The notes beneath the pieces are model-generated. The model had not been told where the DNA came from. It worked only from the letters and a program-made list of their open reading frames with translations, and searched no databases. Position numbers and translations under genes: made by a program. A stretch of 53,709 nucleotides of DNA, filler included, from Sluysia triapertura (Eukaryota): the NCBI GenBank assembly GCA_046118255.1. It is 4 parts of 4 records of this genome, joined end to end, with 100 filler letters (N's around TTAATTAATTAA, not from the genome) between each part and the next. Parts side by side here need not be neighbours in the genome. Positions count along the whole stretch, not along the records: positions 13,585 to 25,809 come from JBJNIA010127963.1; 3 more parts are not named here. One strand, 5' to 3'. Below, piece by piece: positions 13,585 to 37,973 of the stretch (its first letter is position 1; each line of letters opens with the position of its first letter).

Positions 13585-13656
13585 TTTTAAACTGTGCCGC
13601 CAAATTTTGAAATCTTTAAAATAGTGCCGCAACAAAAAAAAGGCTGAGAATCACTG
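13585..13656. mobile_element. hAT-like MITE terminus abutting the gypsy RT
   Basis: gtgccgc subterminal repeats and the end ggctgagaatcactg, whose reverse complement is a CAGTG-TTCTCA-type hAT end. Confidence 0.55.
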
Positions 13657-15541
13657 ACTTAAAATAAAACTTACAAAATGTGCATGGGCAGAAGAAAAAG
13701 TATCTTCTTAGGACACATAATATCTAAATATGGTATCAAACCAAACCCAAGAAATATTGAAAAAGTAATCAAGTTTCCTCAACCTGATAATGTTAAAAAG
13801 GTTCAGAGTTTTCTAGGTCTGGATAATTATTATAGGAGGTTTGTTAAAAATTTTGCAAAACTCGCTCAATCCCTCAGAATCTAACAAAGAAGGACACAGA
13901 ATTTAAATGGACCGAAGAACAGAAAAAGGCATTTAAAGAACTAAAGGAACATCTAACTACAGTACCAATATTAATATTTCCGGTATTTTATAAGCCTTTC
14001 CTACTAACTACAGATGCTAGTAATTATGCTATTGGCACAATTTTAGGTCAGAAAGACAAGAATAATCTTGAAGCAGTCATAGCACACGCCAATCGAAGAC
14101 TTAACAAAGCAGAAACGAATTATTCGACTGTAGAGAGAGAATGTTTAGCAATTGTATGCGCATGTAAATTGTTTAGACATTATTTATTATGACAAAAAGT
14201 TTATTTGTACACTGACCACAAACCCTTGACATATTTATATAATGACAGAGATGAAGTCAGTAGACTTAACAGATGGTTTAATAAACTGTCCGAATTTAAC
14301 TTGGAAATTGTTTATAAGCCAGGTAGCTTAAATAACGCAGCTGATTGTATGTCTAGATTGACGAATGTAGACAACAAGGGAAATATCAATTTCATACAAA
14401 TTATGTCGGTATCGGGGAAAATGCAAAACTCTGAAGAAATTATTAAACATCAGAGAGAAGATAAAGAGACTTCCGCTCTTCTAGATGCATTAGCTTAAGG
14501 AACTTTAAATGAATTACAAGCAAAAAGATTAGCTATCATGGATGGAATATTAAGATTTAAAAACATTTAAGATTTATACCTATTCTAATACAATTTCATG
14601 ACGGACAATTAGGAGGTCACTTATCAACAAGGAAAACATTATCCAGAATTAAAAGTAAATACTATTGGGAAAATATGGAATCCGATATCAGAAAATGGTG
14701 CAAAGGCTGTTCAATATGTTGTCGACGAAAGAATACTGGACAAAAGACCAAAACCTATGCCAGTACCACTATCATCAATGGAATTTACCGCTATGGACAT
14801 TATGGGTCCTCTTCCAGAAACCATTAATGGCAATAAGTATATAATTGTATTTGTGGATTATTTGACCAAATGGCCAGAGGCCTACTCGATGCCTAACCGA
14901 AAGGCTGAAACAGTAGCACAGATACTTGTAGAAAAGATAATAAATATAGATATGGAACTCCTAGAAAATTATTAACAGATCAAGGGACTAACTTTACTAG
15001 CGATGTAATCAAATCAGTAGCTAAAATCTTTAATATTCTACGAATTTACACGTCGCTTTACCATTCACAAACTGATGGACTGGTGGAACATTTTAACAGA
15101 CTCTCATCAATATGATCCAATCTTATATATAGCACCATGTCTTTACCAATTTATTTCACTCCGTTTTACCTAATGTATGCTGGTCGATTTGGAATGGGTT
15201 CCACCTACTTCACAGAAATTCCGGAATACGTGACAACAATGAGAGAACAATTACAAGACGCACGGAAACTGGCATGTCTTCAAATTAAATACTCTCAGGA
15301 AATATATAAGTACACATATGACAAAACAGCAAAAGAACATACATTTAAGATAGGTGACGAGGTGTTAATAGATTATCCAATAACTAAACCTAGTCAATCA
15401 CCTAAGTTACATAAACCTTTTAAAGGACCTTATCTAATAACAAAAGTTAACGATACAAATGCGTTTGATAAAGATCCTAATAAAACTAATTCTGAAACTT
15501 TTGCAGCACACGTCAATAGATTCAAGATGGCACCAATATAA
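13657..15541 (+). mobile_element. pol: Ty3/gypsy pol of element A (RT thumb, RNase H, integrase with GPY/F), frameshifted
   Basis: FLGHIISKYGIKP, VQSFLGL.NYYRRFV, TTDASNYAIG, YSTVERECLA, YTDHKPL, ADCMSR, HHCC motif (H...GGH...CKGC), MDIMGPLP, TDQG, KPFKGPY, HVNRFK. Confidence 0.95.
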
Positions 15542-15579
15542 TTTAAGAAATAGAAAAGTTTTTTAAATCAAAACTGAAA

Positions 15580-16242
15580 GTTCAGCCAAGGCACAAAGAT
15601 CGAGATAAACCACCTTCAATTCATGTACTACGAAATAAACAAGTGGTATTTATGATGCATTCCCATGGAAATGACCTGGCTCATATAATGCAAAACGTGC
15701 GATTTAACGGGCGATGTGTTAGAGCAATTGTAGATACCGGTGCTACTGTTTGAGTAGTTCATAAAAACTTTTTAACTACGTGGGAATCAGTGTTCTTAAA
15801 TAGACCAACTCTACTAACATATAATGTTAATCAAACACTCATAAATATTAATGGAACTTTATTATGTTATATAGAAGTATTAGGGCAATATGTACAAGTT
15901 TTAGTAAATGTTTGAGATAATAGCCCATACGGAATAATATTAGGCACGGACGTTATCAATAAATTAGAAGATCTGGTCATTCACAGTAAATATGGCTTTA
16001 TAAAAGTACCACCATGTTCAAATATGATTATACCGCAATTATTAGTTCCACAAGTTGGTGATGTATTAATCTTATATCAAATGCCAATTTCGAATCCACC
16101 ATTACAAGTTCCAGACTTACTATTACCCGATATTGTTGAATCTACACTTCATTTATCTAATATATCATGGGGATCACCATCGACAATTACATCGGAGGAA
16201 AATTCGGATCAGGAATCGGATCAGATGTTCAAGAAACAGTAA
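15580..16242 (+). pseudogene. Second retropepsin-like aspartic protease downstream of integrase (element A)
   Basis: RAIVDTGATV at 15721-15750 and YGIILGTDVINKL near 15930-15965, with in-frame stops. Confidence 0.85.
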
Positions 16243-18470
16243 TGATAATGACTAGTATAAGAAAAAGAAATTGTTTTAACAAAAATTGTTTTAGTAAAAT
16301 ATCTTGTTGGTTTTATATCTTAACTGTAATTTTTCTATCACTTATAATTAATGCTATAGCAATAGAAACAGATGAAGAATACAAAAATATGAATATCGCT
16401 ACAAATCACGGTAGAGAATACAAAATAATGATTAGCGATATATACAATCAATACTGGAAATTTGAATTTATTTCCAAGAAAATGATTTTACGACACAAAT
16501 TTGAAATTTATTGTATCTATTTAAAACCCTTACTAGTAGGAAGACCACATCATTTAAACGGTATCCCACATTGTCCGCATTATGGTTACAGACCTGTGTT
16601 AATAACTTTTCTCTAGACACCCCAAGAAATACACGAGATATCTCGAAATTTATCAAACAAATAGATCAATTAAGAAATGGAGAAACAACAAGAATACAGA
16701 CAACCTTATCCGATTATGGTGCAATTAAGAGACAGATAAATAATTTAAACAATTCAACTGCAAAAGGTACAACGAACATTCTTATAAATTCTTGATAATG
16801 TTACTAATTTTCACAGTACTATACATATTTTGGATTATACTCTATTTGTTTAAAATTGGTAAAAAGATCTTATAACTTTAATTTTGATTATGATAGTTAC
16901 AGTAGTCCAATGCGACGAACAATCCTTTAAAACGGAATACTTTGAATTCTATAATAGAAATAATGAAGTAAAGGTTAAAATATTGAACCAAAACATTCAT
17001 GCCAAATGTGCCTGTTTAAAACCCGCCAAACTTAATTTTAGTTCATGGATCAAATACGAAAATTATATTAATAGTGAATTGAGATAACCAGTCACGGTTT
17101 GCTCAGATATTTTGCCTATCGAAGGTAGACATTATAGTGAAAATCCATCATTCATCAAAACATTCGCATTTTGCATTTAAAGGAACAAGAAAACATTTAA
17201 CAATATTAGAAATATTACGGAATATTGTTTGTAATTGCTTTAGCTATAGTAGTATTGACTATTATTATGTTTGTTTCAAACAAATGTCGATACCCATGCC
17301 TACCACATAACAATAATAATGATGCATACACAGTTCCACATCGAAACAATTATGCTCTTCCACCAGGTATGCCGATACTTCCACCTCCAATTTATGAATA
17401 CGCCACAAATAATCAGATACCACTTATATATGGGTTCTGGCAAATGACTCAAGTAAAGTCTACAATTCTGATATGTATTTACTTATCTTACAAATCAAGT
17501 ACAAATTATTTATCAGGAAACATCGCACCTAAGATAATTCTAGTATCAACTCAAAAGGATATTTACGCTAAAATATTAACAGATAAGGTTAAATTATTTG
17601 CTGTTCAAATAAAATGTTTTTTAAAGGATTTCTACTGGTTTATATCGTATATTGACCTTGTTGAATATCAACTATTCAACGTAAGGTTAGCTATAAAAAT
17701 GGAATATGAATTTCAAAGTGATTCAAAGATTATTTTACTAAGCTACTACAAAATAATAACTAAACCGTTTGTGTTTCAACAATCACCGACATACAACACT
17801 AAGACTAAACCATCTGTCTCTAAGAAATCATCAACGTTAATTGAATTTCGAATGATCATCTATCGATATCTTGGAAATGTTGTACGTATTCATAACCCGT
17901 CATACAATAATACGTTATTGATCGCCTACGAATTGAGTGATGATTTACGTTATGGAATAATATTACCTAATGATACTATTCGTTTGTATCATCTTCCGAA
18001 TAATAGACTTTTGTTCATTAAATTTGGATATTAAGAAAAGCAGAATTATATGATTCCAAAGGATTTTGGCCAACAATCAGATACTATGACGTGCAGGTAC
18101 CAATTATAGATAAGTACGAAAATGATTTAGATACGAAATCAGAAAAAACGTTCAAAAGTGATAACAACGTTATGAAAATACCTTATGATGGGAATAGGAG
18201 TATAAACTCGAGTAATACCAATCGGAACAGGAGCATAAGTGCGAATACTACAGTATAAGTATGAATATAATTAAGGAGACTACTAGTTGTTCAATTATAA
18301 AAGAATCCAACAATAACTTTATCACAACTATAAACTATATTTTAATAATAACTTCTTTGTTAACATTAATAATTAACTTTATTATCCCAAAGTTTTACTT
18401 GTTTATTAGGCAGAGGGCCCATTTTTTTCATATAAGTTTTAATACATATTGCATAATTGACCACATGTAA
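16240..18470 (+). pseudogene. Accessory membrane polyprotein of element A (signal/TM segments alternating with about 3 ectodomains)
   Basis: Colinear homology with 35096-37216, e.g. IYCIYLKPL/IYCIYWKPL, YFEFYN/YFDFYN, PAKLNFSSW/PARLNFSLW, YTVP/YSVP, ITKPF/IKTKPY, GFGQQ/GFGQQ. Confidence 0.8.
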
Positions 18471-18600
18471 TGGCACTCCCATTCATTTTGGGTCATGTGT
18501 AATATAAAATCATAAGAATTAATATTAATTTTGTATATATGATAAGGATAGTGCATATGACTGTATGTAATGGTTCACCATTCATCTTGAGTCATGTACG
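18451..18600 (+). other. Two tandem related stem-loops
   Basis: tgacc..atgtaatgg..ccattcat..ggtca and atgac..atgtaatgg ttca ccattcat..gtcat. Confidence 0.6.
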
Positions 18601-18711
18601 AACTAAAATAGCACTTAACTTTTATAGGATTTTTAACTTCTAATATTTTTAAAACTTTCAATATTACTTATGTATTATATTATTATTATATTTTTTAGCT
18701 AGATAACATCA

Positions 18712-18918
18712 ATGTCATTCTGTACGTGTGCCATTTGCTTACACTGTCTTAGGAATTACTTCGCCAAAACCTCCCCTTGTCTCCACCGTTTTCACTTTTT
18801 CTGTCTATACGATCTTTTTGAATCCTCCCCTTCACCTTTACCTAACTGTCCCTTATACCGGACCACCATTATAAACGCTCCTTCCGTCGTTCCTATGAAT
18901 TCACGGTTAAGTACATAA
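18712..18918 (+). CDS. Small RING-H2 finger protein (element A accessory; last Cys changed to Tyr)
   Basis: CAIC...PCLHRFHFFC...NCPLYR, preceded by an acceptor-like ttttttag. A homologous RING lies at 34647-34848. Confidence 0.75.
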   Translation: MSFCTCAICLHCLRNYFAKTSPCLHRFHFFCLYDLFESSPSPLPNCPLYRTTIINAPSVVPMNSRLST

Positions 18919-19029
18919 CAGACAATTCGGAAAAACCCGGTATTGATATATATCAGCCGGCGTTTGGGAATGTATTTATTTTGATAGCCTGTCGCCAATT
19001 TGGTAAGGTTGTTACATGGCCTTGTTTCG

Positions 19030-20019
19030 AGATTAGAGAAATAGGTTTTACGAAAAATTATTCGAATTATGTTAATGCTTACATATTTATTTAATGTAGG
19101 TTTAATATTAAATATTACATGACAACGTTGTCTTAAGGCGAAACTAATATTGGAAACTTTATTGTTCAGCAATTGCAAATACATTATTTTTTTATTCGTG
19201 TTTACTTTCTTTAACAGATACATATTTCTTTTAAAAGTTAGATTATTAGTATTTATATAAACAATAAAAATTTTATAATGAACCAAACAGGAATTGTTTA
19301 TTATCATGAAATCAAATAGGCAGTATAAAAACTTTAAATTGTTATCGAATCTCGAGTTCAGAATTACTTGTTTTACTGCTGATTTTATTGCTGCACCTCG
19401 TCGTATTTCATAAATCTGAGTACTGGACGCATAATCTAAAAAGGATAATATACTAAAATAATGAATTAAATAAAAAAAATTAGAAATTACTAAAGATATG
19501 ATTTCAATATGGCCGTTATTGTTAGCATTTTGGAAAATCCTAGAATCGCTAGACCCTCTTGTCTTCACCAGATGAATGTATATGTGATAACTCAATTTGG
19601 AGATATAAATCAAATTGATATTGAGTCTTCGATCCGAAATTAGTTACTTTGGATGTAACATCATAAAAATTCGCAATAATAGATCTAATTGAAATCGACA
19701 TAGAATTTGATTTGTTACATTCAGGGACAACATGATCATGGCTAACTTCGATTGATTTCCAGTAGTGTTGGATTAAAGGATACTGAGTCACAATATCATA
19801 ATTTTCATTGAGAAAAATCATTATGAATGACTTTAAAATAGCCTTGTAATTAGTAACTTCATTTGAGAAATAAACCATAATAGAATTAAACATCACATCA
19901 CTTTCATCAGTTAGTTTTGCCAAGTCAAACACATTGTAAGCGTTTTCCGAATTCGCAGAAAAATGGCCATAACTAAATCGATGAACTACTTTTATGGGCA
20001 TCTTTAAAGCATGGTTCAT
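19030..20019 (-). pseudogene. Unassigned ORFs downstream of the PIP4K fragment
   Basis: Overlapping ORFs 19549-20019 and 18792-19613 with no recognisable motif. Confidence 0.3.
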
Positions 20020-20138
20020 CTAATAACCTTTTAACATATCTTCGGATTCTTGATGTATTGTCTTTAATTGAAATGCGATTATTATATAATTTTTGTAATA
20101 CTACTGTTGAATCTTATGAAACATTTTAACATTATATA

Positions 20139-20746
20139 GCTTAAGTTGATACTTTATGCAAATAGGAAGGTGGACTAAACGCATTTTTTGTGACTAACAT
20201 TTAGTAAATTTGATCAGATACTATTAAACGATACATAGCTAAACGATACATAACTAAAGGGTTTCTCCATACGAATCAACAATATATGCATGATAAGCTT
20301 CTAATAAATAATGTACTTGTTCAACATCTTTGCTAGTTATAATCTCAAAAACAAATTGATGATCATATGTTAAAAGATATTTCTTATTCGGACTCCATTC
20401 TGACTGCTTTTTAGTAAAGGTATTAAAATAATCCGAATCTTTAATATTAAATCTTTCTTTTAAATTTTTAAGCATCAAAGTACAATATTCTTTGAATTTA
20501 TATCTACTAGGCATATTTTCTTTGCTAAACACTTGGTTATGAACTTTTACTTTCATGTAAGATTTAAAATCATAGTTTAGTAAAACAGCTCTTGATTTTA
20601 CATGAATCATTTGTGTTAATGAATAATTAACTTCCCACATAAGAACACATTTGAGAGGCTCTTTTGAACGAAATAACTTTAATTTTTGACGGCCTCCTTT
20701 TACTTTTTGTCTTGATTGAGTTGCCGTTATTAAAGCATCACTATAC
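20139..20746 (-). pseudogene. PIP4K2: Intronless, truncated PI5P 4-kinase type II (PIP4K2) retrocopy
   Basis: QKLKLFRSKEPLKCVLMWEVNYS...DFKSYMKVKVHNQVFSKENMPSRYKFKEYC...YHAYIVDSYGETL, then MYRL...VTKNAFS...KYQLK in shifted frames. Confidence 0.9.
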
Positions 20747-20829
20747 TGGAAATTTTAGATTAATAGTAAGTGATTTTTAAAAGGTTTTAATACTATTATT
20801 GTTGTTTAATGATTAGTGTAATCAAATTT

Positions 20830-21750
20830 GATTTATTAACTTTTCTATTTTTAGACCGTCTTTCCTAGTTGGTCATCCAATCAGGCCTTATCTAGTGTAT
20901 CATTAAATGAAATTCAATCTGACTGGATGACAGGCAGAGAACAAAATCAATTAGTAAAAATAACAATTACAAATGGTTGGCCATCATCAGTGTTGACACG
21001 ATAATGAAGATTGTGATGAGCAATGTCAACACTGGTGATGGTAGTAACAAATTGAATTGGTTAATAAAATTTTGATTATTAAATACTTTCGTAATTTAAT
21101 AATAATAATAACAATATTGTTATTATTATTATTAACAAAAAGGAAAAAAGTAAAAAGATGTATAATTTTCTTTTATCGAACTCACACGATCTTTCTTTAT
21201 TTTAATCTTGACTTTCTTAACATATAAAAGATAAAAAATTAAACAAAAATTGATAAAATAGAATGAAATAGCGACGATAACAGGATGCACTATGCTCGAG
21301 CTATCGTTATTTCGTTGTATAAAATTGAATTCCTTAAAAATGTACACGATCTTCTTTAATTCTTACAGATTTTTAACATGTAGTAAATTTAAAGTGTATT
21401 TGGGACTAAATTTCTGAGTAATAATTGTTTATTGAAAGAATTAATAAGTATAATTAACCTTTGAAGATATAATAATTGAATTGAATCGTGAGATGAAACA
21501 GAGAATGTTAGAATGAATTCTTAGATATTGATTGAAGTTTATAATAGAAAACAAGATTTAAATATTTGGAAGATCGTGGATAAAAGGCCTATTGAGAAGA
21601 TTGTAATTTAAAAAATCTAAAAGGGCAATTACAATACAACTGTTGGTATATTTTGTGTGATTTGTTTGTTTGATGTTTTTGGTGTTGTTGAAGATTATGC
21701 ATAGATGAATAGTGAATTTAAGATGTAATTGATTCGAAGATGTGTGTTGA
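20830..21750 (-). repeat. Leader/LTR-like repeat, copy 1 (homologous to 30338-31250)
   Basis: About 900 bp of colinear similarity, including ttcgaatcaa, aattcactattcat, ctcgagcatagt and two hairpins. Confidence 0.85.
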
Positions 21751-21969
21751 TGGCGAAAAATTGTTTAATTTAAATAACTTATTATTTTTTTAAAAGTGTT
21801 TAACAATAAAATTACAAATGTTAATCAAAAACAAACTATTTAATTTTAATTTTGAAATTACAAAAGAAATAGGCTTAAGGCCTGTAACAATTAACAAATT
21901 TAAAATGATAAGAAAATATGGTGTTGTATTAAAATTGAAATATAACAAATAAAGAAACTATAAATAAAG

Positions 21970-22757
21970 TTATTGATAATCGTAGCGGTGCTGCAATTGA
22001 CATTCCGGTTTTTTTATAAGAACAATTTTCTTAATAAGTTTTTCAGATAAAATGTTCTTATTTACCAAACTATTTATATAAACTAGTTTTGTACATTTTA
22101 TCAAATATCCTCTTATTACACATTCATATCGCTGAATAAATATTAAATCGCCTTCTCTTACTGCTTGAAAAATATCGAAAGAGTTATCAACAATTAATTT
22201 TTCAACAAATACTAGAGGCATATCTAATTTTTTTTGTAATATCGTCTATATGTACACACCACTTTTCTTTAAGTACATCGTTCAATTGTAATGATATCAA
22301 TCTGAGATATGAAGAGTCAATCAAAATATTATTTATTAATCGTAAATTATTGTCATGAAATAACATATTACTAACATATGATTCAATAGTCTTTAAATCA
22401 ACTTCTAAAGTATTAGATAACACAAGTAACGAAACTTTATGGAAAATATTATTTATTAACATATTACTAACGAAATAACATATTATAACGAAATAACATA
22501 TTACTAACACATGTTTCAATAGTCTTTAAATCAACTTCTAAATTATTAGATAACGCGAGTAATGAAACTTTATGGTTTTGGAGTTCTAATTCTTCATAAA
22601 TTTCATTTGATATTTAGAACAACTTTAACTTGTTACTAGATATCAAAAAATTCATTCTATCAATGCAATTCCTTTCGCTTGATTTATCAATTGATGAAAC
22701 TTCATGCGCTATCTTAAAATCAGAGGCTAATATCTTAATTTCATGCCAAGTTGTCAT
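21970..22757 (-). pseudogene. UFL1: Intronless N-terminal retrocopy of E3 UFM1-protein ligase 1, with an internal duplication and frameshifts
   Basis: MTTWHEIKILASDFKIAHEVSSIDKSSERNCID resembles the UFL1 N-terminus (W.EI..LA.DF..A......SERNCI). Also LIDSSYL...LNDVLKE and IRGYL...INSL. 22380-22443 is duplicated at 22510-22575. Confidence 0.85.
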
Positions 22758-22900
22758 TTAACAAATAACCAAAAGCAACGTTTAAAATTTTTAATCAATA
22801 TCATAATAATTATCTGAGCAATAAATTATTAAACAGTTTTATACTAATTACAGTATTAAGTAAATAATTATCTGTAAATAATTACTGCTTATCGACTAGT

Positions 22901-23800
22901 TTAGTTGTTACCATTTTCTCGTGTCTCTGGTTCCAAACTATGACGTCCATTGGTTGTAAGTGGCTGCTGAGATGCATCAGAACTGTACATACCACAACTC
23001 ACTGAATCAGTACGTGACAGATTATCTACTGATATTATCGTTCCTTGGTTAGTACTAGGCATATTAAGACCTGATGATTTGACCAATGAAAATGCAGCTT
23101 CAAACTCATAAACTTTACTAAGTGCATTTTGTTTCAATATTCGTTCTTCTTTCAGCTGCTTTTTAATGAGTTTACTTCCCTAGTGGATTTGTTGGTAACG
23201 GTTTTGTGTTTTAATATTGTCTGAAAAAACTTTAGTCATATTGACAATTTTGCTGTTCTTTTCTGTAATTTCTGACACTAATTGATCAATATGTATTTGT
23301 TTCACCAATGCTAATTGCTGTTCTGTTGCTGCTTTTCTTTCAGAAGCATGTTTCTTTTCATTTTCTCTTTCATTTCTTTGTCTAAAGTTTTCCGCAAATC
23401 ATTCAATTCTTTTTCAGTGCCAGTTAAATAGTGTTTCATACGTTGTAATTCTTCGACCAATAACTGTACTTTTTGATCTGATTTCATTTGTATAAACGTT
23501 ACGTTTTTTTATGTTGATCACGTTCAGAACAAATATCGGCTAATGCTTTTTGAAAATTAATTACATTTTAAGTATGTCTGATGCCAATTAAAGATCGATT
23601 TCATAGGACTCATCCTTTGACGAATGTGAATATTTTCTTGTTGAAGTGATGCCAAATTTTTCGATAACTTCAAATTACGTTTTGCTTTGTGTGTATTTGG
23701 ATTGGTTTTGGTATTTTCATGTTTATTAGGTGATTTCAAAACACAATCTTTATCATATTCTGCACAAAATTTATCGTTACACAGTGATGGATCGAGATCA
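22901..23800 (-). pseudogene. Decayed intronless coiled-coil protein fragment
   Basis: Frameshifted coiled-coil reading: LASLQQENIHIRQR, KKHASERKAATEQQLALVKQ, KQLKEERILKQNALSKVYEFEA. Confidence 0.5.
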
Positions 23801-25113
23801 AATATATTGTATAGTATAAAAAAAATTGAAGAAAAAAAATAGAAAAGCAGATTGATAATAAGGATAAAAGAAATAATAATAATAATGATAACAATAACGT
23901 GATTATTATGTTTATTAATACTGAAATGTTGATGTTGAAATTTATTGTGAAAATTATTATAAAAGTTATCATAAAAGTTATTATTTGATAATCATATTAT
24001 ATACAATAATGACTATAATTATTATATATATTTTAATACGATCAGAATTGTAATAATAATAGCAGTAGTACGTGATAATTAGGTGCGATGATTATGTTTG
24101 TTTTTTAAATGAGTTTAGTAGTTTGTTTAATAATCTGTGTACATGTGAAGTGTTTTTATGTGATATAGAATTATATTATGAATAATTACACAGTTTGTAT
24201 GCTACATTACTTTTGAATTAACCTAATGTTTTAAACAAGCATAACAATACTGGTAGTGAAAGAAAAGTTGAATTTCATGAAATAAAATCAATGTGCTTAC
24301 AAGACAAATCATTAATCTAGTAAAGACATATTCAACTAGATTAATGATTTGTCTTTACTGTCAGCATGCAAAATGAACAAATAGTATAATTTTTCTTAAG
24401 TTTTGACTTATTTTATGTTTAATCCCGCATATCAACAACAATTAATTGATTTTATGACAGAAAGCGTTCAAAATTTGCGTTTATAATTAGCCTTCATCAT
24501 GTAACTAAATGAAAATTATTACGGGTATTTAGTAAACAATATTAAAAACTATCTTTTAAGTTATTGTTTTACAAAAAGTACTAATTTCGTACTGTGCGCA
24601 ACAGTGAAAGCAATTTTATCTACTATTTCGCGCCTACGGTTACATATGTCCCATTAGATTTTCAAATATAATTTTTTTTCCTCTGTGAATGAATTTTATA
24701 TATCGATTAGGATTCATTCGTCCCATAACATTTCCTTCAATAACAATGATAATGATAATAATAATAATAGCAAAATCTAAATTTAGATTCTAAAGAAATA
24801 TCTTCGAAAAAAATTTATTTCAGACGCATCTTTTTAAAAATAGATGAAAATAATTTATTATAAAATATGCAAAGATTCATTTCGGTTTATTTCAATACAC
24901 TATTAAAATCATTAAAAATTTGTATAATTCAAAAATTTAGTAATTTTAAAATTATTTTAATTAATTTGAAAGATAGTCGACTATAAATAGAATAATTAAA
25001 ATTTAGTGCAACCATTATTTCATATTTATCATAAATTTATCATAAATAAATTCCATAAAATTATTTAAAAACTAAATAACAGACAATGCTACAAGATTAT
25101 TAATAAAAAATAC

Positions 25114-25350
25114 TTTAGATATAAGTTCGAGGTCTTTCTTGTTTGCATGGATCACTTCTTCTTTATTAACAGATCCAATTTCAAAACCATCACATTTAAT
25201 ATCGACAATATTTAAAGGGTTTATTCCAATATCTAGTGACTGAGCACCGGTTGATCCTTCTTTGACATCAAAAAAGAATAATTTAAATTCACTAAGGGCC
25301 AAATACTGCTTCTTCCAACCTTTTCTTATTCCGCCTTGCTTATGAGGAAC
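25114..25350 (-). CDS. CDC42BP: Exon of an MRCK/CDC42BP (genghis khan)-like kinase, PH domain
   Basis: AG/GT-bounded 237-nt exon encoding VPHKQGGIRKGWKKQYLALSEFKLFFFD...SVNKEEVIHANKKDL. Confidence 0.8.
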
Positions 25351-25673
25351 CTGAAACATGGAAAGTAAAAAAAGTCATGTATTTTTTCCAAATTTATCAG
25401 TTTATTTATGAATTTATGAAGTTTAGTACCAAATTCGTTTGAAAAGCTTACGAAAGAAAAATTAATTATAATGGATTGAAATGAAATTTTGACGTCATTT
25501 TAGTTTTCGTATTTGTTCTACATTATGCATTTAAATTGGTACTTCATAGATTTTAAGCAGAAGACTAACATACAATACAATAATATTCAGAAAAAGTCAA
25601 TAATGATTTTTACGTTAGTTTCAATGTGAACTATATATTAAATAATAAAAATTTATTTTGATAGATAAAATAC

Positions 25674-25738
25674 CTTGATGAATCCTTCGCAGACAGTCCC
25701 AATGCCAAGATTAAATTTAGCACCTTTTCCAAATGAAT
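25674..25738 (-). CDS. CDC42BP: Preceding exon of the MRCK-like gene (GIGTVCEGFIK)
   Basis: AG/GT-bounded 65-nt exon matching the GIGTAYEGYVK motif just before the MRCK PH domain. It splices in frame to 25350. Confidence 0.75.
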
Positions 25739-25739
25739 C

Positions 25740-25740
<1 letters not shown>

Positions 25741-25809
<69 letters not shown>
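25741..25809. repeat. (AAT)n microsatellite at a contig end
   Basis: Perfect AAT repeats running into Ns. Confidence 0.95.
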
Positions 25810-32999: not shown

Positions 33000-34234
33000 A
33001 TCCGTTTAACTGTGTATGCAAAATTATAAATAGATGTGCAGTCGGTGTTAAAGGAACAAGATGTAAAGAAGAAGAAGGCAAAGGAGAAAAAGAAAAAGGA
33101 GAAGGAGGAGAAAGAAGAGGAGGATGTGAAGGAAGAATGATTTTTGAATCGTCTATTGGTGGTAAAAATGATTTTTGAATCGTCTATTGGTGGTAAAAAT
33201 GATTTATCCTTACTTTGTATTAAATCAAAAAGTGAAATCATATCTTTAGCGTGTTGTAGACATGAGACACGCGGTGGGAAGGGATATAGCAACTTCTAAA
33301 CATTCAGCGCCCTTAAAATTGGATTAAAAGACTCGTGTGATATTAAGTTTGTACATGTGAGATTAATAATTCCTCTTAACCAGCTATATTGGATTTTAAA
33401 CGTATTGATGACTATATCGAGAAAGAATGCCACCAATATTTTGACATACAATGAAGTGAGCCAATATTGGCGAATATTGGCTGTGTCCTTCGCATTAATT
33501 AAGTTATCCTCCCTTAACCCATGTTCTGCCGCTAGAAAATTTCTAATCCTTATGCTAGGTCTTAGTAATTCATCTGAATGGAAGAGTTTGTAATAAGGCA
33601 TCAAACAAACTCTTATTGGTTGGTAGTCTTCCTTAAAATCTAACGCGAGTTGTACGGCTATGAAAACCAACTTGTTTTTGTCAAGTATAGATATATGTGG
33701 GGTATGAGTATAAGTTAACCTTTCCTTCCACTTATAAAAGTTGTCCTTATCTTCCGCATATAATAAAGGATATTTGGTTAAGTCTAAAGGTTTATCAATA
33801 TTTAGGAAAAGAATAGCAAAAGTTGTGGGGAATTCCTCTGCTTCAACCTGCAAGTCTTTTATTATTAAAGACGAATAACCTTGTATTCGCGAATATAGGG
33901 GAACTTTATTGACAAATAAAGATATCTTAAGTGAACCCCTAGCTGCGGCTATTATTACCTGGCTGTCATTTTTGGGATATCCCTGCAGGGTATTTACAAT
34001 CAAAGGGGTTTGAATTTGTTTAAGGCGGAATAGATGGGTAATAAAATTTTGATCTAACTCATTTTTCAAGATGTTAGGAGTTAGATTTGATATTAAGAAT
34101 GTGAAAGGGGTATCATTTTTACCACAAAAGCGATCGACGCCATTATAGAATGACGGTATATTATTTGTTATGTGTGCATGTGGGAGTTTTGTAGTAGTAG
34201 TCGATTTTGTTGACAAAGAAGCTTTTACAGACAT
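33000..34234 (-). CDS. Uncharacterised accessory ORF of element B (312 aa open, probably originally longer)
   Basis: ORF 33296-34234 has an acceptor-like ttccttcgtttag immediately before the ATG. The reading continues after a single stop, and a 31-bp tandem duplication at 33136-33197 shifts the tail. Confidence 0.55.
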
Positions 34235-34394
34235 CTAAACGAAGGAACAAGTTTGGTGAAGAGAAGTAATTACAAAGTTAGATATATTATATATTAAATC
34301 GTTAGTTTGTTTTTTATATACTATAATTATCAATTTACCTATAATTTTAGGAAGTAAAAAATAATAAAAAGGAAATAAAAATGAAAATGAAATA

Positions 34395-34634
34395 TTAAGT
34401 ACTTTTCTTCTTGAGAAATGGATTATGTTTAATTTTCAGATTACTCTTATATGAACCTATCTTTTTGTAAAATCGTCTTAATTGTCTCCTGCGACGGTTG
34501 TGTTTTTGCGAACGCGTCAGTCCAGGAGGAAAATTTGGTTTAGGTACACTTATTTTATTATTATTAAACTGTTTATAGTAGGTGGGCTGAATGATTTCTA
34601 TTTCCTGTATTTGAATACTATTAATATTTTCCAT
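34395..34634 (-). CDS. Small Arg/Lys-rich ORF (element B)
   Basis: PPGLTRSQKHNRRRRQLRRFYKK, directly after the RING ORF. Confidence 0.45.
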   Translation of the reverse strand: MENINSIQIQEIEIIQPTYYKQFNNNKISVPKPNFPPGLTRSQKHNRRRRQLRRFYKKIGSYKSNLKIKHNPFLKKKST

Positions 34635-34646
34635 ATTAATATTTAG

Positions 34647-34848
34647 TTAAATTTCTTCAAGTGCATATGAATGACGAAATTTTCCCTTATAGAATACTTG
34701 TATTTCTTCTACTATTGTTATACATAATGGACAATTCATATGCTTTGCTTATGATGCATTTAAAATGGAGTTTATGTATGCATGGAAATGTTTTTACGTA
34801 ATGTTTGTTGATTGCCTTTTGACAAATTGGACATTTGATATAGTACAT
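34647..34848 (-). pseudogene. RING-H2 finger ORF of element B (one frameshift)
   Basis: MYYIKCPICQKAINKHYVKTFPCIHKLHFKCII, then NCPLCITIVEEI in the shifted frame, preceded by ttcttattttag. Confidence 0.75.
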
Positions 34849-35095
34849 TATCTAAAATAAGAATGAAAACTAAAATAGAAGAAAATAAAGATATACTTAG
34901 TAAATAAAAGTTTATAACTAATTAAATAAAATTATTATGACATTAATTAAATAAAGTTTATGTTCCTATTTAATGTACAAAACTAAATAAAACTACGAAA
35001 AGATAATGAATAATAATTATAAGTTAGGTGACCGGTCAGACAGAAGGTAACCGTCAATATCGATCACTCGTAACTTATTTATTTTTTATTCATCT

Positions 35096-37216
35096 CTATA
35101 CCTTGATTGAGCGAGTTAATCTACGCGTGTTAATTACATAAATTTTTATGACTTCAGTCGTAAGATTGACTGCAAGTAACGCATAAAGTATGAATGTTAT
35201 AAGAGATAAATATATGTTGATTTTATTTGAATTGGCTTGGTCGCTATTGTTGATTATTTTAATTGAAAAATTATTATTTGGAGTTTTAATAATTTTATTA
35301 GTTTTATTGAGTTTAGTAGTTTTCTTATTTATTGATTTTGTCATTTCGTACTTATTATACTTATTTAATGTATCTTCAATAGTTTCATTAATAATTGGTA
35401 CTACTAAATTAAATTGTTGTCCAAATCCAATACGGTTCATTTTAAATGTTTCATTAATGAAACGTATCCATACATATATAAATGGGAACGTCAATTATGT
35501 TTGGTAATCTATTCTAATTGTTAACTTAGGTGGTATTAACTCTATAGTGGAAACCTTATTGGTACGATATTTTATGGCGATTGGATTATTTAGTAACGTG
35601 TTGGTCATTTTAACTAAGTTATTTCTGTCAATTATTGCTGTAAAGGAGCAATTCATCCATTGTCTACTAAAATAATCAAAAAATAAATATGGTTTAGTTT
35701 TAATCCAGTGATACTGTGTGTATATTAATCTATTTATTAGCTCTATTGATATCTTAACTTTATATAATTGGGATTCGAACAATTCTTCACAAGTTATGAT
35801 CCATTTTTTGATTGTTATATAAGGGATGGCTGAAGTAGTGCATTGATCTTGTAAGCAGCATCTTATAGATAAGTGAATTAATTTTCCATTTATGTTTTTA
35901 ACACTAGCTATAATTTCATCGGTTTTCACTTGAATAGATAATTGCATGTCATTATAAAACATTTTCTTGCTTAATTTGTTTGTCGCATTAGCAGTGATTA
36001 TACATGTTAAACAAATACATAGTAAAACTGATGACATTTGAATTCCGTTGTAATGTGTCTGTAATCTTAAATCATCATTATATTCGTCTAATGGAGATGG
36101 CATTAATGGTGGTCCTGGAGGAGCATAAAATCGATTGATTCTTGGTACTGAATAATGATTATCGTCGTCGTTATTAGATGAAAAATTCAAATATCTATAT
36201 TTGTTCATTATAATAAACGTGATCATTAATAATGTTATAATTAAAGCAATAATAAATAATGTTGCTGCTATGATTAGAATTGCCAATGATGGATCTTTTC
36301 GTAATGAGTCTATAATGGTTAATTCTTTTCTATTACCTTTTATGGCATAATGTAGTTGTTTAATTATTTTGGCTTGCTTTTTTATAAATATTACTATATG
36401 TCTGTCTTCAGAAAGCAAAACATCCTTACAAATTGTAACGGGATATTCTGTATTTGGTATTGCATGTTGATAGGTTTCCCATAAACTAAAGTTGAGTCTT
36501 GCGGGATTAATACATATATAATTTGCTTTTATGTTCATATTGGTCATTTTGATTTGTACTTCTGTGTCATAGTTGTAAAAATCAAAGTATTTCGATCTGT
36601 ATACTTTCTGTGATCCATTTGCTATTGATATCATTGATAATATAGTGAGTAACGTTATATCTCGACGAATGTTATTAGTTTTTAAAATCCTATTACAAGT
36701 GATAATGTAATAAATGCTAAATAACAAGTATATTATAGTGAAAATTAGAAGTGCCAGTATAAAGATATTCTTTGTACAATCTTCATTCTTTTTTCTTATT
36801 GTATTTGTGCTTATTTCCTTATTATTCATACTTGTTTCTTTATTTACTATTTTATCTGTTAATCTTTCCAAATATCTTGTTGTTGTTGGTGGTGAAATTA
36901 TTTAAGTTTCCTTGTAACATTGTTCATTAAGTATGTCCGTGAAATTTATTGTTATTAACTTACAATTATAAAATGAAAATCCTATTATTGTAGTAAAATA
37001 GATTGAATGTTCACATTGGTAAATATCATCTACTAACAAAGGTTTCTTTATTACTAATGGTTTCCAATAGATACAATAAATTTTTAAATTATAATTGGGT
37101 ATTGTGTTTCTATCGTCTATTTCAACTGTCCAAAATCGATTGAAAATATTTGTAAGAAAGATTGCCTGTTTAGTATCAGTATAGCTTGTTAAGTTTGTTG
37201 GATAATGAGTTATCAT
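35096..37216 (-). CDS. Accessory membrane polyprotein of element B (nearly intact; ORFs 36902-37216, 35495-36871, 35096-35494)
   Basis: Multiple TM and signal segments, a Tyr/Pro-rich cytoplasmic loop, and colinear homology to 16240-18470. Confidence 0.8.
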
Positions 37217-37231
37217 GGTAGTTAATTGAAG

Positions 37232-37800
37232 TTATCTGTAGTTATCTGTTCCTATGCCTGATGTTGAAGAAACTGTGGTATCCCACCAATCAAGATTTTC
37301 CCAATTCGGAGTTGGTGATGGTGGTATAATTGGATTCAATTCTGTAATTTGATAATTCTGTGGTAGAGGTGGTACTGGTCTTGGCATTGGAGGTAAAACT
37401 AATTGTGGTAATACTACATGTGTTCCTGAAGGTATTTTGAGAAATCCTAATCTTCCATGAATTACATTATTTTCTAGTTTATTTATTACATCCATTCCTA
37501 ATATAATATCATATGGGCATTTTTCCCCAACTAATATTGTTACAAACAAATCTACGTCTAAAATTGTTAATTGACATTGTAATATTCCATTAAATAAAAT
37601 ATATGAATCGTATTCCAGCTTGTTGTAACATTGTAATTTCTAAAGCATTTAGTCTATTGTAATTAATAATAGTGTTATTTGAACCTGTATCTATGACTGC
37701 TGGTACCCATAGTTGATTGAATTTAATGCTTTGAACCAAGTGATTTTGTATATTGAAAGAAGAGGTTATCATACTTATTGTACTTATTGGTTTATTATTT
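37232..37800 (-). pseudogene. Second aspartic protease of element B
   Basis: VPAVIDTGSNNTII (DTG at 37683-37691) and CPYDIILGMDVINKLEN, homologous to 15580-16242. Confidence 0.85.
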
Positions 37801-37973
37801 GATAAATCCGTGCTTAATAACTTAGATGGTTTATCTCTGTCTTTAATCCTTGGTTTAACCTTTAATATACTTTTCGTAATCTTTCTATTTCTTAAGTTAT
37901 ATTCGTCATTAGGTGCTAATTTACATCGATTTACGTGTACAACAAAAGTTTCCGCATTCATATCATTAGGTTT
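37801..37973 (-). mobile_element. Integrase C-terminus of gypsy element B, in frame with the second protease
   Basis: AETFVVHVNRCKLAP..YNLRNRK...KVKPRIKDRDKP matches element A SETFAAHVNRFKMAP..NLRNRK...KVQPRHKDRDKP. Confidence 0.85.

What the first reader, a model, noticed from the sequence alone, without database searches (positions are those of the whole stretch)
13657..19000. Gypsy lineage with a second protease after integrase and a conserved accessory cassette (membrane polyprotein plus RING), in two diverged copies
Seen: element A (+) and element B (33000-37973, -) lie on different contigs and share the order IN(GPY/F), KV.PR.KDRDKP linker, aspartic protease (DTG...ILG.D), Pro-rich linker, multi-TM region, hairpin(s), RING-H2. 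Their similarity is much clearer at protein than DNA level. Known: Ty3/gypsy elements normally carry one protease, upstream of RT, and at most an env after IN; giant gypsy elements with extra ORFs (Burro) are described in Schmidtea. Inference: this is a virus-like retroelement with a selected accessory module, in which the extra protease releases accessory proteins from the Pol polyprotein. The two-protease claim is indirect, because the canonical upstream protease is cut off by contig ends in both copies.
Basis: partly seen in the sequence, partly recalled or inferred. Interest (0 to 1): 0.9.

Follow-up and report, generated by a model that had tools for sequence, protein, structure and literature searches.

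The report
Dead gypsy element with post-integrase protease
This is the broken 3' half of a gypsy-type retroelement whose polyprotein carries an extra aspartic protease right after integrase, a trait shared with intact unnamed relatives that look like the giant planarian Burro elements, followed by a membrane-protein and RING region that matches nothing else.

Summary
The copy is dead, with many frame changes and stops.

The protease after integrase is not chance and not a nested insertion. Seven of the ten closest relatives among 1.8 billion representative proteins carry one, in an uninterrupted ORF, 27-44 residues after the integrase C-terminus. None of 29 more distant relatives does. Two relatives that reach far enough upstream have two proteases before RT and one after integrase in one ORF. 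The "extra, not relocated" reading therefore holds in relatives. It cannot be tested for this element, which is cut at the contig edge.

These relatives match the published description of Burro-like elements (in-frame viral fusion glycoprotein, ankyrin cargo).

The TM/RING cassette has no detectable homologue. Copy B lies outside my piece, so its conservation is unchecked.

Cleavage of cargo by the extra protease is plausible but remains an inference. Verdict: new variant of a known kind, moderate interest.

The parts
13585..18915 (+). Retroelement remnant as a whole. The 5' side is cut by the edge of the piece and the 3' limit is uncertain (between about 18915 and 19100). No LTR was found in the piece.
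   Evidence: Domain order. + strand open-run excess. No long direct repeat pair.
13640..15975 (+). Broken pol remnant, given as one part: RT tail, RNase H, integrase, linker, post-integrase protease. Minimum counts of breaks: at least 4 frame changes and at least 2 in-frame stops from RT tail to the integrase C-terminus, 1 frame change in the integrase-protease linker, and 2 in-frame stops in the protease.
   Evidence: tblastn outer bounds against relatives. Pfam on pieces. Single-frame read of the protease region.
13908..14297 (+). RNase H domain
   Evidence: Pfam RT_RNaseH_2 5.2e-33 and RT_RNaseH 2.4e-22 / 7.3e-06
14582..14734 (+). Integrase zinc-binding domain (H2C2)
   Evidence: Pfam Integrase_H2C2 8.2e-20
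14793..15061 (+). Integrase catalytic core (rve), found in two fragments
   Evidence: Pfam rve 3.1e-04 and 1.8e-03, profile positions 10-57 and 59-100
15158..15535 (+). Integrase C-terminal domain with the GPY/F module
   Evidence: GPY read. 911 relatives at E<=0.001, best 9.3e-22.
15536..15690 (+). Linker between integrase and protease. It carries V-x-P-R-H...R, which corresponds to the V/I-x-P-..-R-Y-P-L-R-S linker of relatives.
15691..15975 (+). Post-integrase retropepsin-like domain (DTGA ... ILGTD)
   Evidence: phmmer against the protease domains of relatives, independent E 3.8e-08 to 1e-05. Motifs read. Weak partial Pfam hits.
15976..18702 (+). Accessory, formerly coding region: a Pro-rich start, then open runs in all three frames (one of 274 codons). 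About ten frame switches would be needed to thread the runs. TM-like stretches lie at about 16293-16373, 16780-16860, 17213-17284, 17961-18026, 18318-18395 and 18637-18699.
   Evidence: Open-run excess reached by 0 of 1000 shuffles. Hydrophobic stretches. TM helix at pLDDT 91 with the rest below 50. No Pfam, PDB or database homologue.
18727..18852 (+). RING finger of RING-H2 pattern, with seven of the eight ligand positions present
   Evidence: Pfam zf-C3HC4 1.9e-05 (24.9 bits, cut-off 21) and zf-RING_2 1.3e-04. PDB RING domains from 1.1e-03.
18795..20019 (-). Neighbour: two overlapping minus-strand open runs (283 and 156 codons) with no recognisable family. The first overlaps the RING by about 120 nt.
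20257..20754 (-). Neighbour: host-like PIP4K N-terminal fragment, reading frame open
   Evidence: PDB 1bo1 2.8e-41
21973..22757 (-). Neighbour: host-like UFL1 N-terminal domain fragment, broken, with an internal duplication of about 133 nt
   Evidence: Pfam E3_UFM1_ligase pieces. Repeat D6.
25075..25374 (-). Neighbour: host-like MRCK PH domain fragment
   Evidence: Pfam PH_MRCK 3.6e-19

Best explanation
The + strand from the piece's edge to about 18.9 kb is the decayed 3' half of an LTR retroelement. It belongs to a Ty3/gypsy branch whose nearest relatives look like the giant Burro elements described in planarians.

In this branch the Pol polyprotein does not end with integrase. A retropepsin domain with its catalytic Asp-Thr/Ser-Gly follows 27-50 residues after the integrase C-terminal domain. 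Cargo is fused behind it. In relatives the cargo is ankyrin repeats, single TM segments and further protease domains. Here it is a set of TM-anchored segments ending in a RING finger.

The most likely working mode is inferred, not shown. The extra protease is a processing module that frees integrase from the cargo, and the cargo pieces from each other. This lets the element append new proteins to one long ORF without a new promoter or splice site. The TM-plus-RING tail would then be a membrane-anchored ubiquitin-ligase-like accessory protein.

This particular copy is dead.
For: Shown.
- Domain order in the window.
- The closest relatives by integrase C-terminus carry the protease in one uninterrupted ORF at a fixed spacing. 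That holds for 7 of the 10 best-scoring relatives with tails of at least 140 aa, and for 0 of 29 more distant ones.
- The linker is homologous: V-x-P-R-H in the window against R-Y-P-L-R-S in relatives.
- P0009 and P0153 hold two proteases before RT plus one after integrase.
- All 20 aligned protease domains have Asp in the catalytic column. 18 of the 19 relatives' domains, and the window's own domain, have D-[TS]-G.
- Cargo follows the protease in relatives.
- The + strand coding signal continues through the accessory region.
- The RING scores above the Pfam cut-off.
- The integrase of the nearest relative is closest to Ty3 integrase, both in PDB sequence and in fold.
- The architecture of relatives (in-frame Monjiviricetes-type fusion glycoprotein before the protease, ankyrin repeats after integrase) matches the description of Burro in PMC6431247.
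Against: - No proteolysis or cleavage site is shown.
- The accessory region has no homologue in any relative or database.
- The window's protease scores slightly nearer to the pre-RT proteases of relatives (26 bits) than to their post-integrase ones (23.5 bits). It also groups with the pre-RT proteases in a weak NJ tree. An independent origin, or a relocation in this family, is therefore not excluded.
- The 5' half is missing.
- No LTR or polypurine tract marks the 3' end.
- The relatives are at most 47% identical and carry no names or organisms.
- Some frame changes could be assembly indel errors rather than mutations.
Confidence: 0.7

Rival explanations
1. Relocation instead of addition. In this element's own family the single canonical protease sits after integrase (order RT-RH-IN-PR), and no protease lies upstream of RT.
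For: The window's protease scores marginally best against the pre-RT proteases of relatives and groups with them in the NJ tree. The upstream half is missing from the piece.
Against: The linker and spacing match the post-integrase proteases of relatives. The two relatives that extend far enough have proteases in both places. The score differences are about 3 bits on a domain with two stops.
Confidence: 0.12
2. The element proper ends soon after the protease. The TM-rich region and RING are unrelated DNA on the same strand, either a host gene remnant or another mobile element.
For: No relative shares any part of 16000-18900. No database homologue exists. The piece holds several unrelated host-like gene fragments. 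No LTR marks the end.
Against: The + strand open-run excess continues without a gap from the protease through the region. Relatives also carry TM-bearing tails after integrase or the protease in the same ORF.
Confidence: 0.15
3. The extra retropepsin domains are not working proteases. They would be dimerisation or spacer domains, as in DDI1-type proteins, or relics of internal duplication without function.
For: One relative's domain (P0151, second post-integrase copy) lacks D-[TS]-G. Several domains hit the DDI1-type Pfam model PF09668. No cleavage has been shown.
Against: The catalytic Asp is present in 20 of 20 aligned domains, D-[TS]-G in 18 of the relatives' 19 domains plus the window's, and the second signature hh-G-x-[DN] in most. 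These domains sit in long uninterrupted ORFs of diverged elements, which argues for constraint.
Confidence: 0.15
4. Nested insertion. The protease is the start of a second element's pol inserted behind integrase.
For: Many breaks lie around the junction, and a frame change sits in the linker.
Against: No RT follows the protease. Seven relatives have integrase and protease in one open frame at fixed spacing with a conserved linker.
Confidence: 0.02

Closest known systems
Burro / GYPSM1 giant gypsy-like elements of planarians (Grohme et al. 2018; Jurka 2007; review PMC6431247)
   Same: The nearest relatives of the window's Pol show the traits described for Burro. They have a very long single ORF, a mononegavirus-type fusion glycoprotein in frame before PR-RT-RH-IN, and ankyrin repeats and other cargo behind integrase. 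A RING-like motif is also listed for Burro1 in the review.
   Different: The window is only 37-43% identical to these relatives over RH-IN. It shows no ankyrin, BIR or BCL2 domain. Its TM/RING tail matches none of them. The text I could read names one protease. The several proteases per ORF seen here, including one after integrase, are not mentioned there. The original paper is not held.
Ty3 of yeast and canonical Ty3/gypsy elements
   Same: The RH-IN order and an integrase with HHCC, DDE core and GPY/F module. Ty3 integrase is the best solved-structure match of the nearest relative.
   Different: Canonical elements have one protease, upstream of RT, and Pol ends with integrase (established knowledge).
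Errantivirus-type gypsy elements with env after pol
   Same: Membrane-protein coding capacity downstream of integrase.
   Different: No env or fusion-protein signature appears in the window's tail. In relatives the env-like domain lies upstream of the protease, in frame.
RNA-virus polyproteins with several proteases (potyvirus P1/HC-Pro/NIa, nidovirus papain-like plus main protease); analogy from my own knowledge
   Same: Works like: several protease domains are spread along one polyprotein, each placed next to the products it frees.
   Different: The protease classes are unrelated, and no cleavage map exists for the elements here.
Membrane-anchored RING E3 ligases, cellular TM-RING-H2 proteins and viral membrane RING proteins; analogy from my own knowledge
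   Same: A TM segment about 100 residues before a C-terminal RING of H2 pattern.
   Different: Only generic RING similarity was found. One ligand position is not Cys/His in this copy. No link between the TM segment and the RING in one reading frame can be shown.

Membership tests
Ty3/gypsy (Metaviridae-type LTR retroelement) | Pol order RT - RNase H - integrase | tested here: met
   RT tail, RNase H, then integrase on one strand. Only the last part of RT lies inside the piece.
Ty3/gypsy (Metaviridae-type LTR retroelement) | Integrase with HHCC zinc finger, DDE core and GPY/F C-terminal module | tested here: met
   Pfam Integrase_H2C2 and rve. GPY read. The nearest relative's integrase is closest to Ty3.
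Ty3/gypsy (Metaviridae-type LTR retroelement) | Long terminal repeats, primer binding site, polypurine tract | not testable with these tools
   The 5' half is cut off. No repeat pair lies in the piece and no clear polypurine tract lies after the RING.
Ty3/gypsy (Metaviridae-type LTR retroelement) | gag and a protease upstream of RT | not testable with these tools
   Upstream of the piece's edge. Seen only in relatives P0003, P0009 and P0153.
Burro family | Giant size (internal region up to 25 kb) with one very long ORF | not testable with these tools
   Only about 5.3 kb of the element lies in the piece. Relatives have ORFs of up to 3036 aa.
Burro family | Env-like fusion glycoprotein in frame between gag and pol | not testable with these tools
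   The region is missing from the window. It is present in relatives P0009 and P0153 (Monjiviricetes_fusion, 1.6e-84 and 2.4e-86).
Burro family | Ankyrin / BIR / BCL2 / MATH-type cargo domains | tested here: not met
   No such Pfam hit in any open piece of the window. Ankyrin is found only in relatives P0004 and P0151.
Burro family | Close Pol similarity to named Burro elements | tested here: inconclusive
   Best relatives are 37-47% identical and unnamed. No named Burro protein came back from any search.
Retropepsin (clan AA aspartic protease) for 15691-15975 | Catalytic D-T/S-G and the downstream hh-G-x-D signature at the usual spacing | tested here: met
   DTGA and ILGTD in one frame. Asp in the catalytic column of the alignment.
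Retropepsin (clan AA aspartic protease) for 15691-15975 | Profile score above the curated threshold | tested here: not met
   Best Pfam score on a piece is 17.8 bits against a cut-off of 28.2, because the domain is split by stops. The relatives' post-integrase domains do pass (P0001 31.2 and 29.9 bits). The window matches them at independent E down to 3.8e-08.
Retropepsin (clan AA aspartic protease) for 15691-15975 | Intact reading frame | tested here: not met
   Two in-frame stops in the single-frame read.
RING-type E3 ligase domain for 18727-18852 | Eight Cys/His ligands in cross-brace spacing | tested here: inconclusive
   Seven of eight are present. Pfam zf-C3HC4 scores 24.9 bits, above the cut-off of 21.
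Errantivirus-like env after pol | Recognisable envelope or fusion protein downstream of integrase | tested here: not met
   No env family hit in the tail. The model of the longest open run is unfoldable apart from one TM helix.

The most novel reading that the evidence does not exclude
In a Burro-like branch of gypsy elements, retropepsin domains are repeated processing modules that punctuate a giant polyprotein. The observed orders include Env-PR ... PR-RT-RH-IN-PR-cargo-PR-cargo, with three to four protease domains per ORF. Related protease types sit at different positions in different elements. This would be the device that lets these elements keep adding host-derived or new cargo, here a TM/RING set, to one ORF. 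As far as the literature I could read goes, it is undescribed.
Probability: 0.45. Interest if true: 0.7.

Novelty: new variant of a known kind. Interest (0 to 1): 0.55.

Why it matters
The giant planarian gypsy elements are known for packing many host-like domains into one huge polyprotein. How such a product is cut into working parts has not been explained in the literature I could reach. A protease domain placed after integrase, and in relatives after the envelope-like domain and after ankyrin cargo, offers a concrete answer that sequence, transcript and peptide data can test. It also shows that the textbook 'one protease before RT' layout is not universal in Ty3/gypsy. The TM-plus-RING tail, if it belongs to the element, would add a membrane ubiquitin-ligase-like protein to the list of cargo that may interact with host pathways. 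The copy in this window is itself dead and has value only as a pointer.

Tried and rejected
- Pfam on every open piece of the accessory region and of the minus-strand runs found only the RING.
- The protein collection search with the 274-codon run and with the RING piece found no hits.
- PDB sequence search with the 274-codon run and with both minus-strand runs found nothing meaningful.
- AlphaFold of the 274-residue run gave mean pLDDT 37.5, with only the TM helix confident, so no fold search was run on it.
- AlphaFold of relative P0001 with an 11-row alignment gave mean pLDDT 50 (protease part about 70). The fold search returned integrases only, led by Ty3, and says nothing about the protease.
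- phmmer of 18 separate accessory pieces against all 154 relatives gave 0 hits at E<=1.
- LTR, tRNA and Rfam searches in the piece found nothing.
- An exact look-up of the host-like PIP4K ORF, run with a 200-base flank so as to fetch no element DNA, was meant to name the organism. The ORF is not on record.
- Literature searches for a second or multiple protease in gypsy elements found nothing. Grohme et al. 2018 is not held.
- Chance and nested insertion were rejected as explanations for the protease.


Full report

I worked only on places 13585-25809. Element B of the finding lies outside this piece and was not seen.

Early on, one search printed the bounds of every stop-free run in all six frames, much as the ORF listing does. 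My working text also listed bounds of pieces while I planned piecewise searches. Those bounds imply where stops lie in genes of a virus-like element. I stopped doing this once I noticed it.

The only read-through was the protease region, in one single frame with X at its two stops.

**What is in the window**

On the + strand, piecewise Pfam scans give these domains:
- RNase H: RT_RNaseH_2, 5.2e-33.
- Integrase zinc domain: 8.2e-20.
- Two fragments of the integrase core.

tblastn of relatives shows that the match starts in the last part of RT, at the edge of the piece. The next open piece is the integrase C-terminal domain and contains GPY.

A linker follows (K-V-Q-P-R-H-K-D-R-D-K-P). After it, in one frame, come a DTGA motif and, about 70 residues on, ILGTD, then a Pro-rich stretch. 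Read in that one frame, the region matches the protease domains of relatives at independent E-values down to 3.8e-08. This places the domain at about 15691-15975.

Downstream, 16000-18700 has open runs on the + strand far beyond local shuffles. Shuffles reached the observed values 0 of 1000 times, and the longest run is 274 codons. The minus strand there is closed.

Six hydrophobic TM-like stretches lie in these runs. One is modelled as a helix at pLDDT 91, and the rest of that run does not fold.

A RING finger sits at 18727-18852. Its zf-C3HC4 score is 24.9 bits against a cut-off of 21, and it shows generic RING matches in the PDB. Seven of its eight ligand positions are present.

**State of the copy**

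The copy is dead. Minimum counts from the piecewise mapping are:
- Pol from RT tail to the integrase C-terminus: at least four frame changes and at least two in-frame stops.
- Integrase-protease linker: one frame change.
- Protease: two in-frame stops.
- Accessory region: about ten frame switches would be needed to thread the open runs. There is no intact reference to count against.

Some frame changes may be assembly indel errors. I cannot test this here.

**Is the protease after integrase real?**

I searched 1.84 billion representative proteins with the 141-residue integrase C-terminal piece. The search gave 911 hits at E<=0.001, and the best is 47% identical or less.

Pfam scans and domain-by-domain phmmer on the long hits show a retropepsin domain after integrase, in one uninterrupted ORF, in P0001, P0004, P0005, P0009, P0151, P0152 and P0153.

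I ranked the 39 relatives that have at least 140 residues behind the integrase C-terminus. These seven are among the ten closest to the window. Their protease starts 27-44 residues after the integrase match. None of the 29 more distant relatives has one. In the window the spacing is about 50 residues.

The relatives share a linker motif, R-Y-P-L-R-S, preceded by V/I-x-P. The window has V-Q-P-R-H at the same place. Chance and a nested insertion are therefore excluded.

**One protease moved, or one added?**

P0153 (3036 aa) reads as follows:
- fusion glycoprotein (407-1044)
- protease (1108-1205)
- protease (1593-1692)
- RT, RNase H, integrase
- protease (2743-2840)

P0009 (2855 aa) reads as follows:
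- fusion glycoprotein
- two proteases
- RT, RNase H, integrase
- protease (2303-2403)
- a tail with a TM segment

P0151 has, after integrase, a protease, a second protease-like domain without D-[TS]-G, ankyrin repeats, a third protease and two TM segments. P0005 has two proteases after integrase. P0003 has two before RT and none after.

In relatives, then, the post-integrase protease is an addition, and these polyproteins hold three to four protease domains. For the window's own family the upstream half is missing, so the claim stays indirect.

One caution applies. The window's protease scores marginally nearer to the pre-RT proteases (26 bits) than to the post-integrase ones (23.5 bits). It also groups with the pre-RT proteases in a weak NJ tree. 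On a 95-residue domain at 26-29% identity with two stops, this does not decide anything.

**Are the extra proteases likely active?**

All 20 aligned domains have Asp in the catalytic column. D-[TS]-G is present in 18 of the 19 relatives' domains and in the window's own domain. Most have the hh-G-x-[DN] signature.

They sit in long open frames of elements that are 30-50% diverged. This speaks for constraint. It does not show cleavage.

**What the relatives are**

All come from unnamed ENA contigs. Their architecture matches the published description of Burro/GYPSM1 of planarians (PMC6431247):
- a mononegavirus-type fusion glycoprotein in frame before PR-RT-RH-IN
- ankyrin repeats behind integrase
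- a very long single ORF

That text names one protease. I found no paper describing a second or post-integrase protease in gypsy elements. The original Burro paper is not held, so I cannot rule out that a figure there shows it.

The integrase of the nearest relative is closest to Ty3 integrase by sequence and by fold.

**The accessory cassette**

Relatives do carry TM-like segments in their post-integrase tails. A membrane-anchored tail is thus a shared theme, but no relative shows a RING by pattern search.

Whether the TM/RING region is a conserved, selected module depends on copy B, which I could not see. No dN/dS was possible. I found no LTR or polypurine tract that would fix the 3' end.

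**Surroundings**

From about 18.8 kb onward the coding signal is on the minus strand. There are two long open runs without any family. Three unrelated host-like fragments then follow in the same orientation:
- PIP4K N-terminus, open.
- UFL1 N-terminal domain, broken and with a short internal duplication.
- MRCK PH domain.

The piece therefore comes from an AT-rich animal genome. The organism was not identified.

- Any look-up or fetch of the DNA of contigs that encode intact relatives. These are env-bearing, provirus-like elements of animals, and I could not tell whether the bar on fetching a virus of animals by look-up covers them.

The cost is that LTRs, gag and the organism names of the relatives remain unknown.

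**Verdict**

The cargo-release mechanism is plausible but inferred. The conservation of the TM/RING cassette is unverified.

I rate this a new variant of a known kind, of moderate interest. The main value lies in the multi-protease architecture of the intact relatives.

Noticed in passing
window 20257-25374, minus strand: Three unrelated host-like gene fragments lie in the same orientation within about 5 kb: a PIP4K N-terminus (open), a UFL1 N-terminal domain (broken) and an MRCK PH domain. None looks like a complete gene. They could be exons, pseudogenes or captured fragments.
   Followed up: partly
window 22343-22442 and 22476-22575: A direct duplication of 100 nt (89% identity, 133 nt apart) lies inside the UFL1-like fragment. 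It makes two pieces hit overlapping positions of the Pfam profile.
   Followed up: partly
window 18795-20019, minus strand: Two overlapping open runs of 283 and 156 codons are longer than any run in 200 shuffles, yet have no Pfam or PDB match. The first overlaps the RING of the + strand element by about 120 nt.
   Followed up: partly
relatives P0005, P0009, P0003 (proteins, no locus): Related protease types occupy different slots in different elements. P0005's first post-integrase protease is closest to P0009's protease after the fusion glycoprotein. P0005's second is closest to P0009's post-integrase protease and to P0003's first pre-RT one. This hints that protease modules have moved within the polyprotein.
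   Followed up: partly
relatives P0151 (1193-1288) and P0004 (951-1042): A second, weaker protease-like domain lies directly behind the post-integrase protease. In P0151 it lacks D-[TS]-G but keeps the Asp column. It may be a tandem pseudo-dimer partner.
   Followed up: no
relatives P0153, P0009, P0151, P0007, P0012, just upstream of RT: Weak hits to the spumavirus A9 protease model lie between the last pre-RT protease and RT. The review describes a dUTPase-like domain at this place in Burro. I did not resolve which it is.
   Followed up: no
window 25740-25809: A perfect (TAA)n microsatellite of 23 units runs to the edge of the piece.
   Followed up: no
window 20257-20754, minus strand: Pfam returned no family for this 166-residue piece at E<=0.1, although phmmer against the PDB matches PIP4K at 2.8e-41. 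A blank from one library is clearly not an absence.
   Followed up: yes
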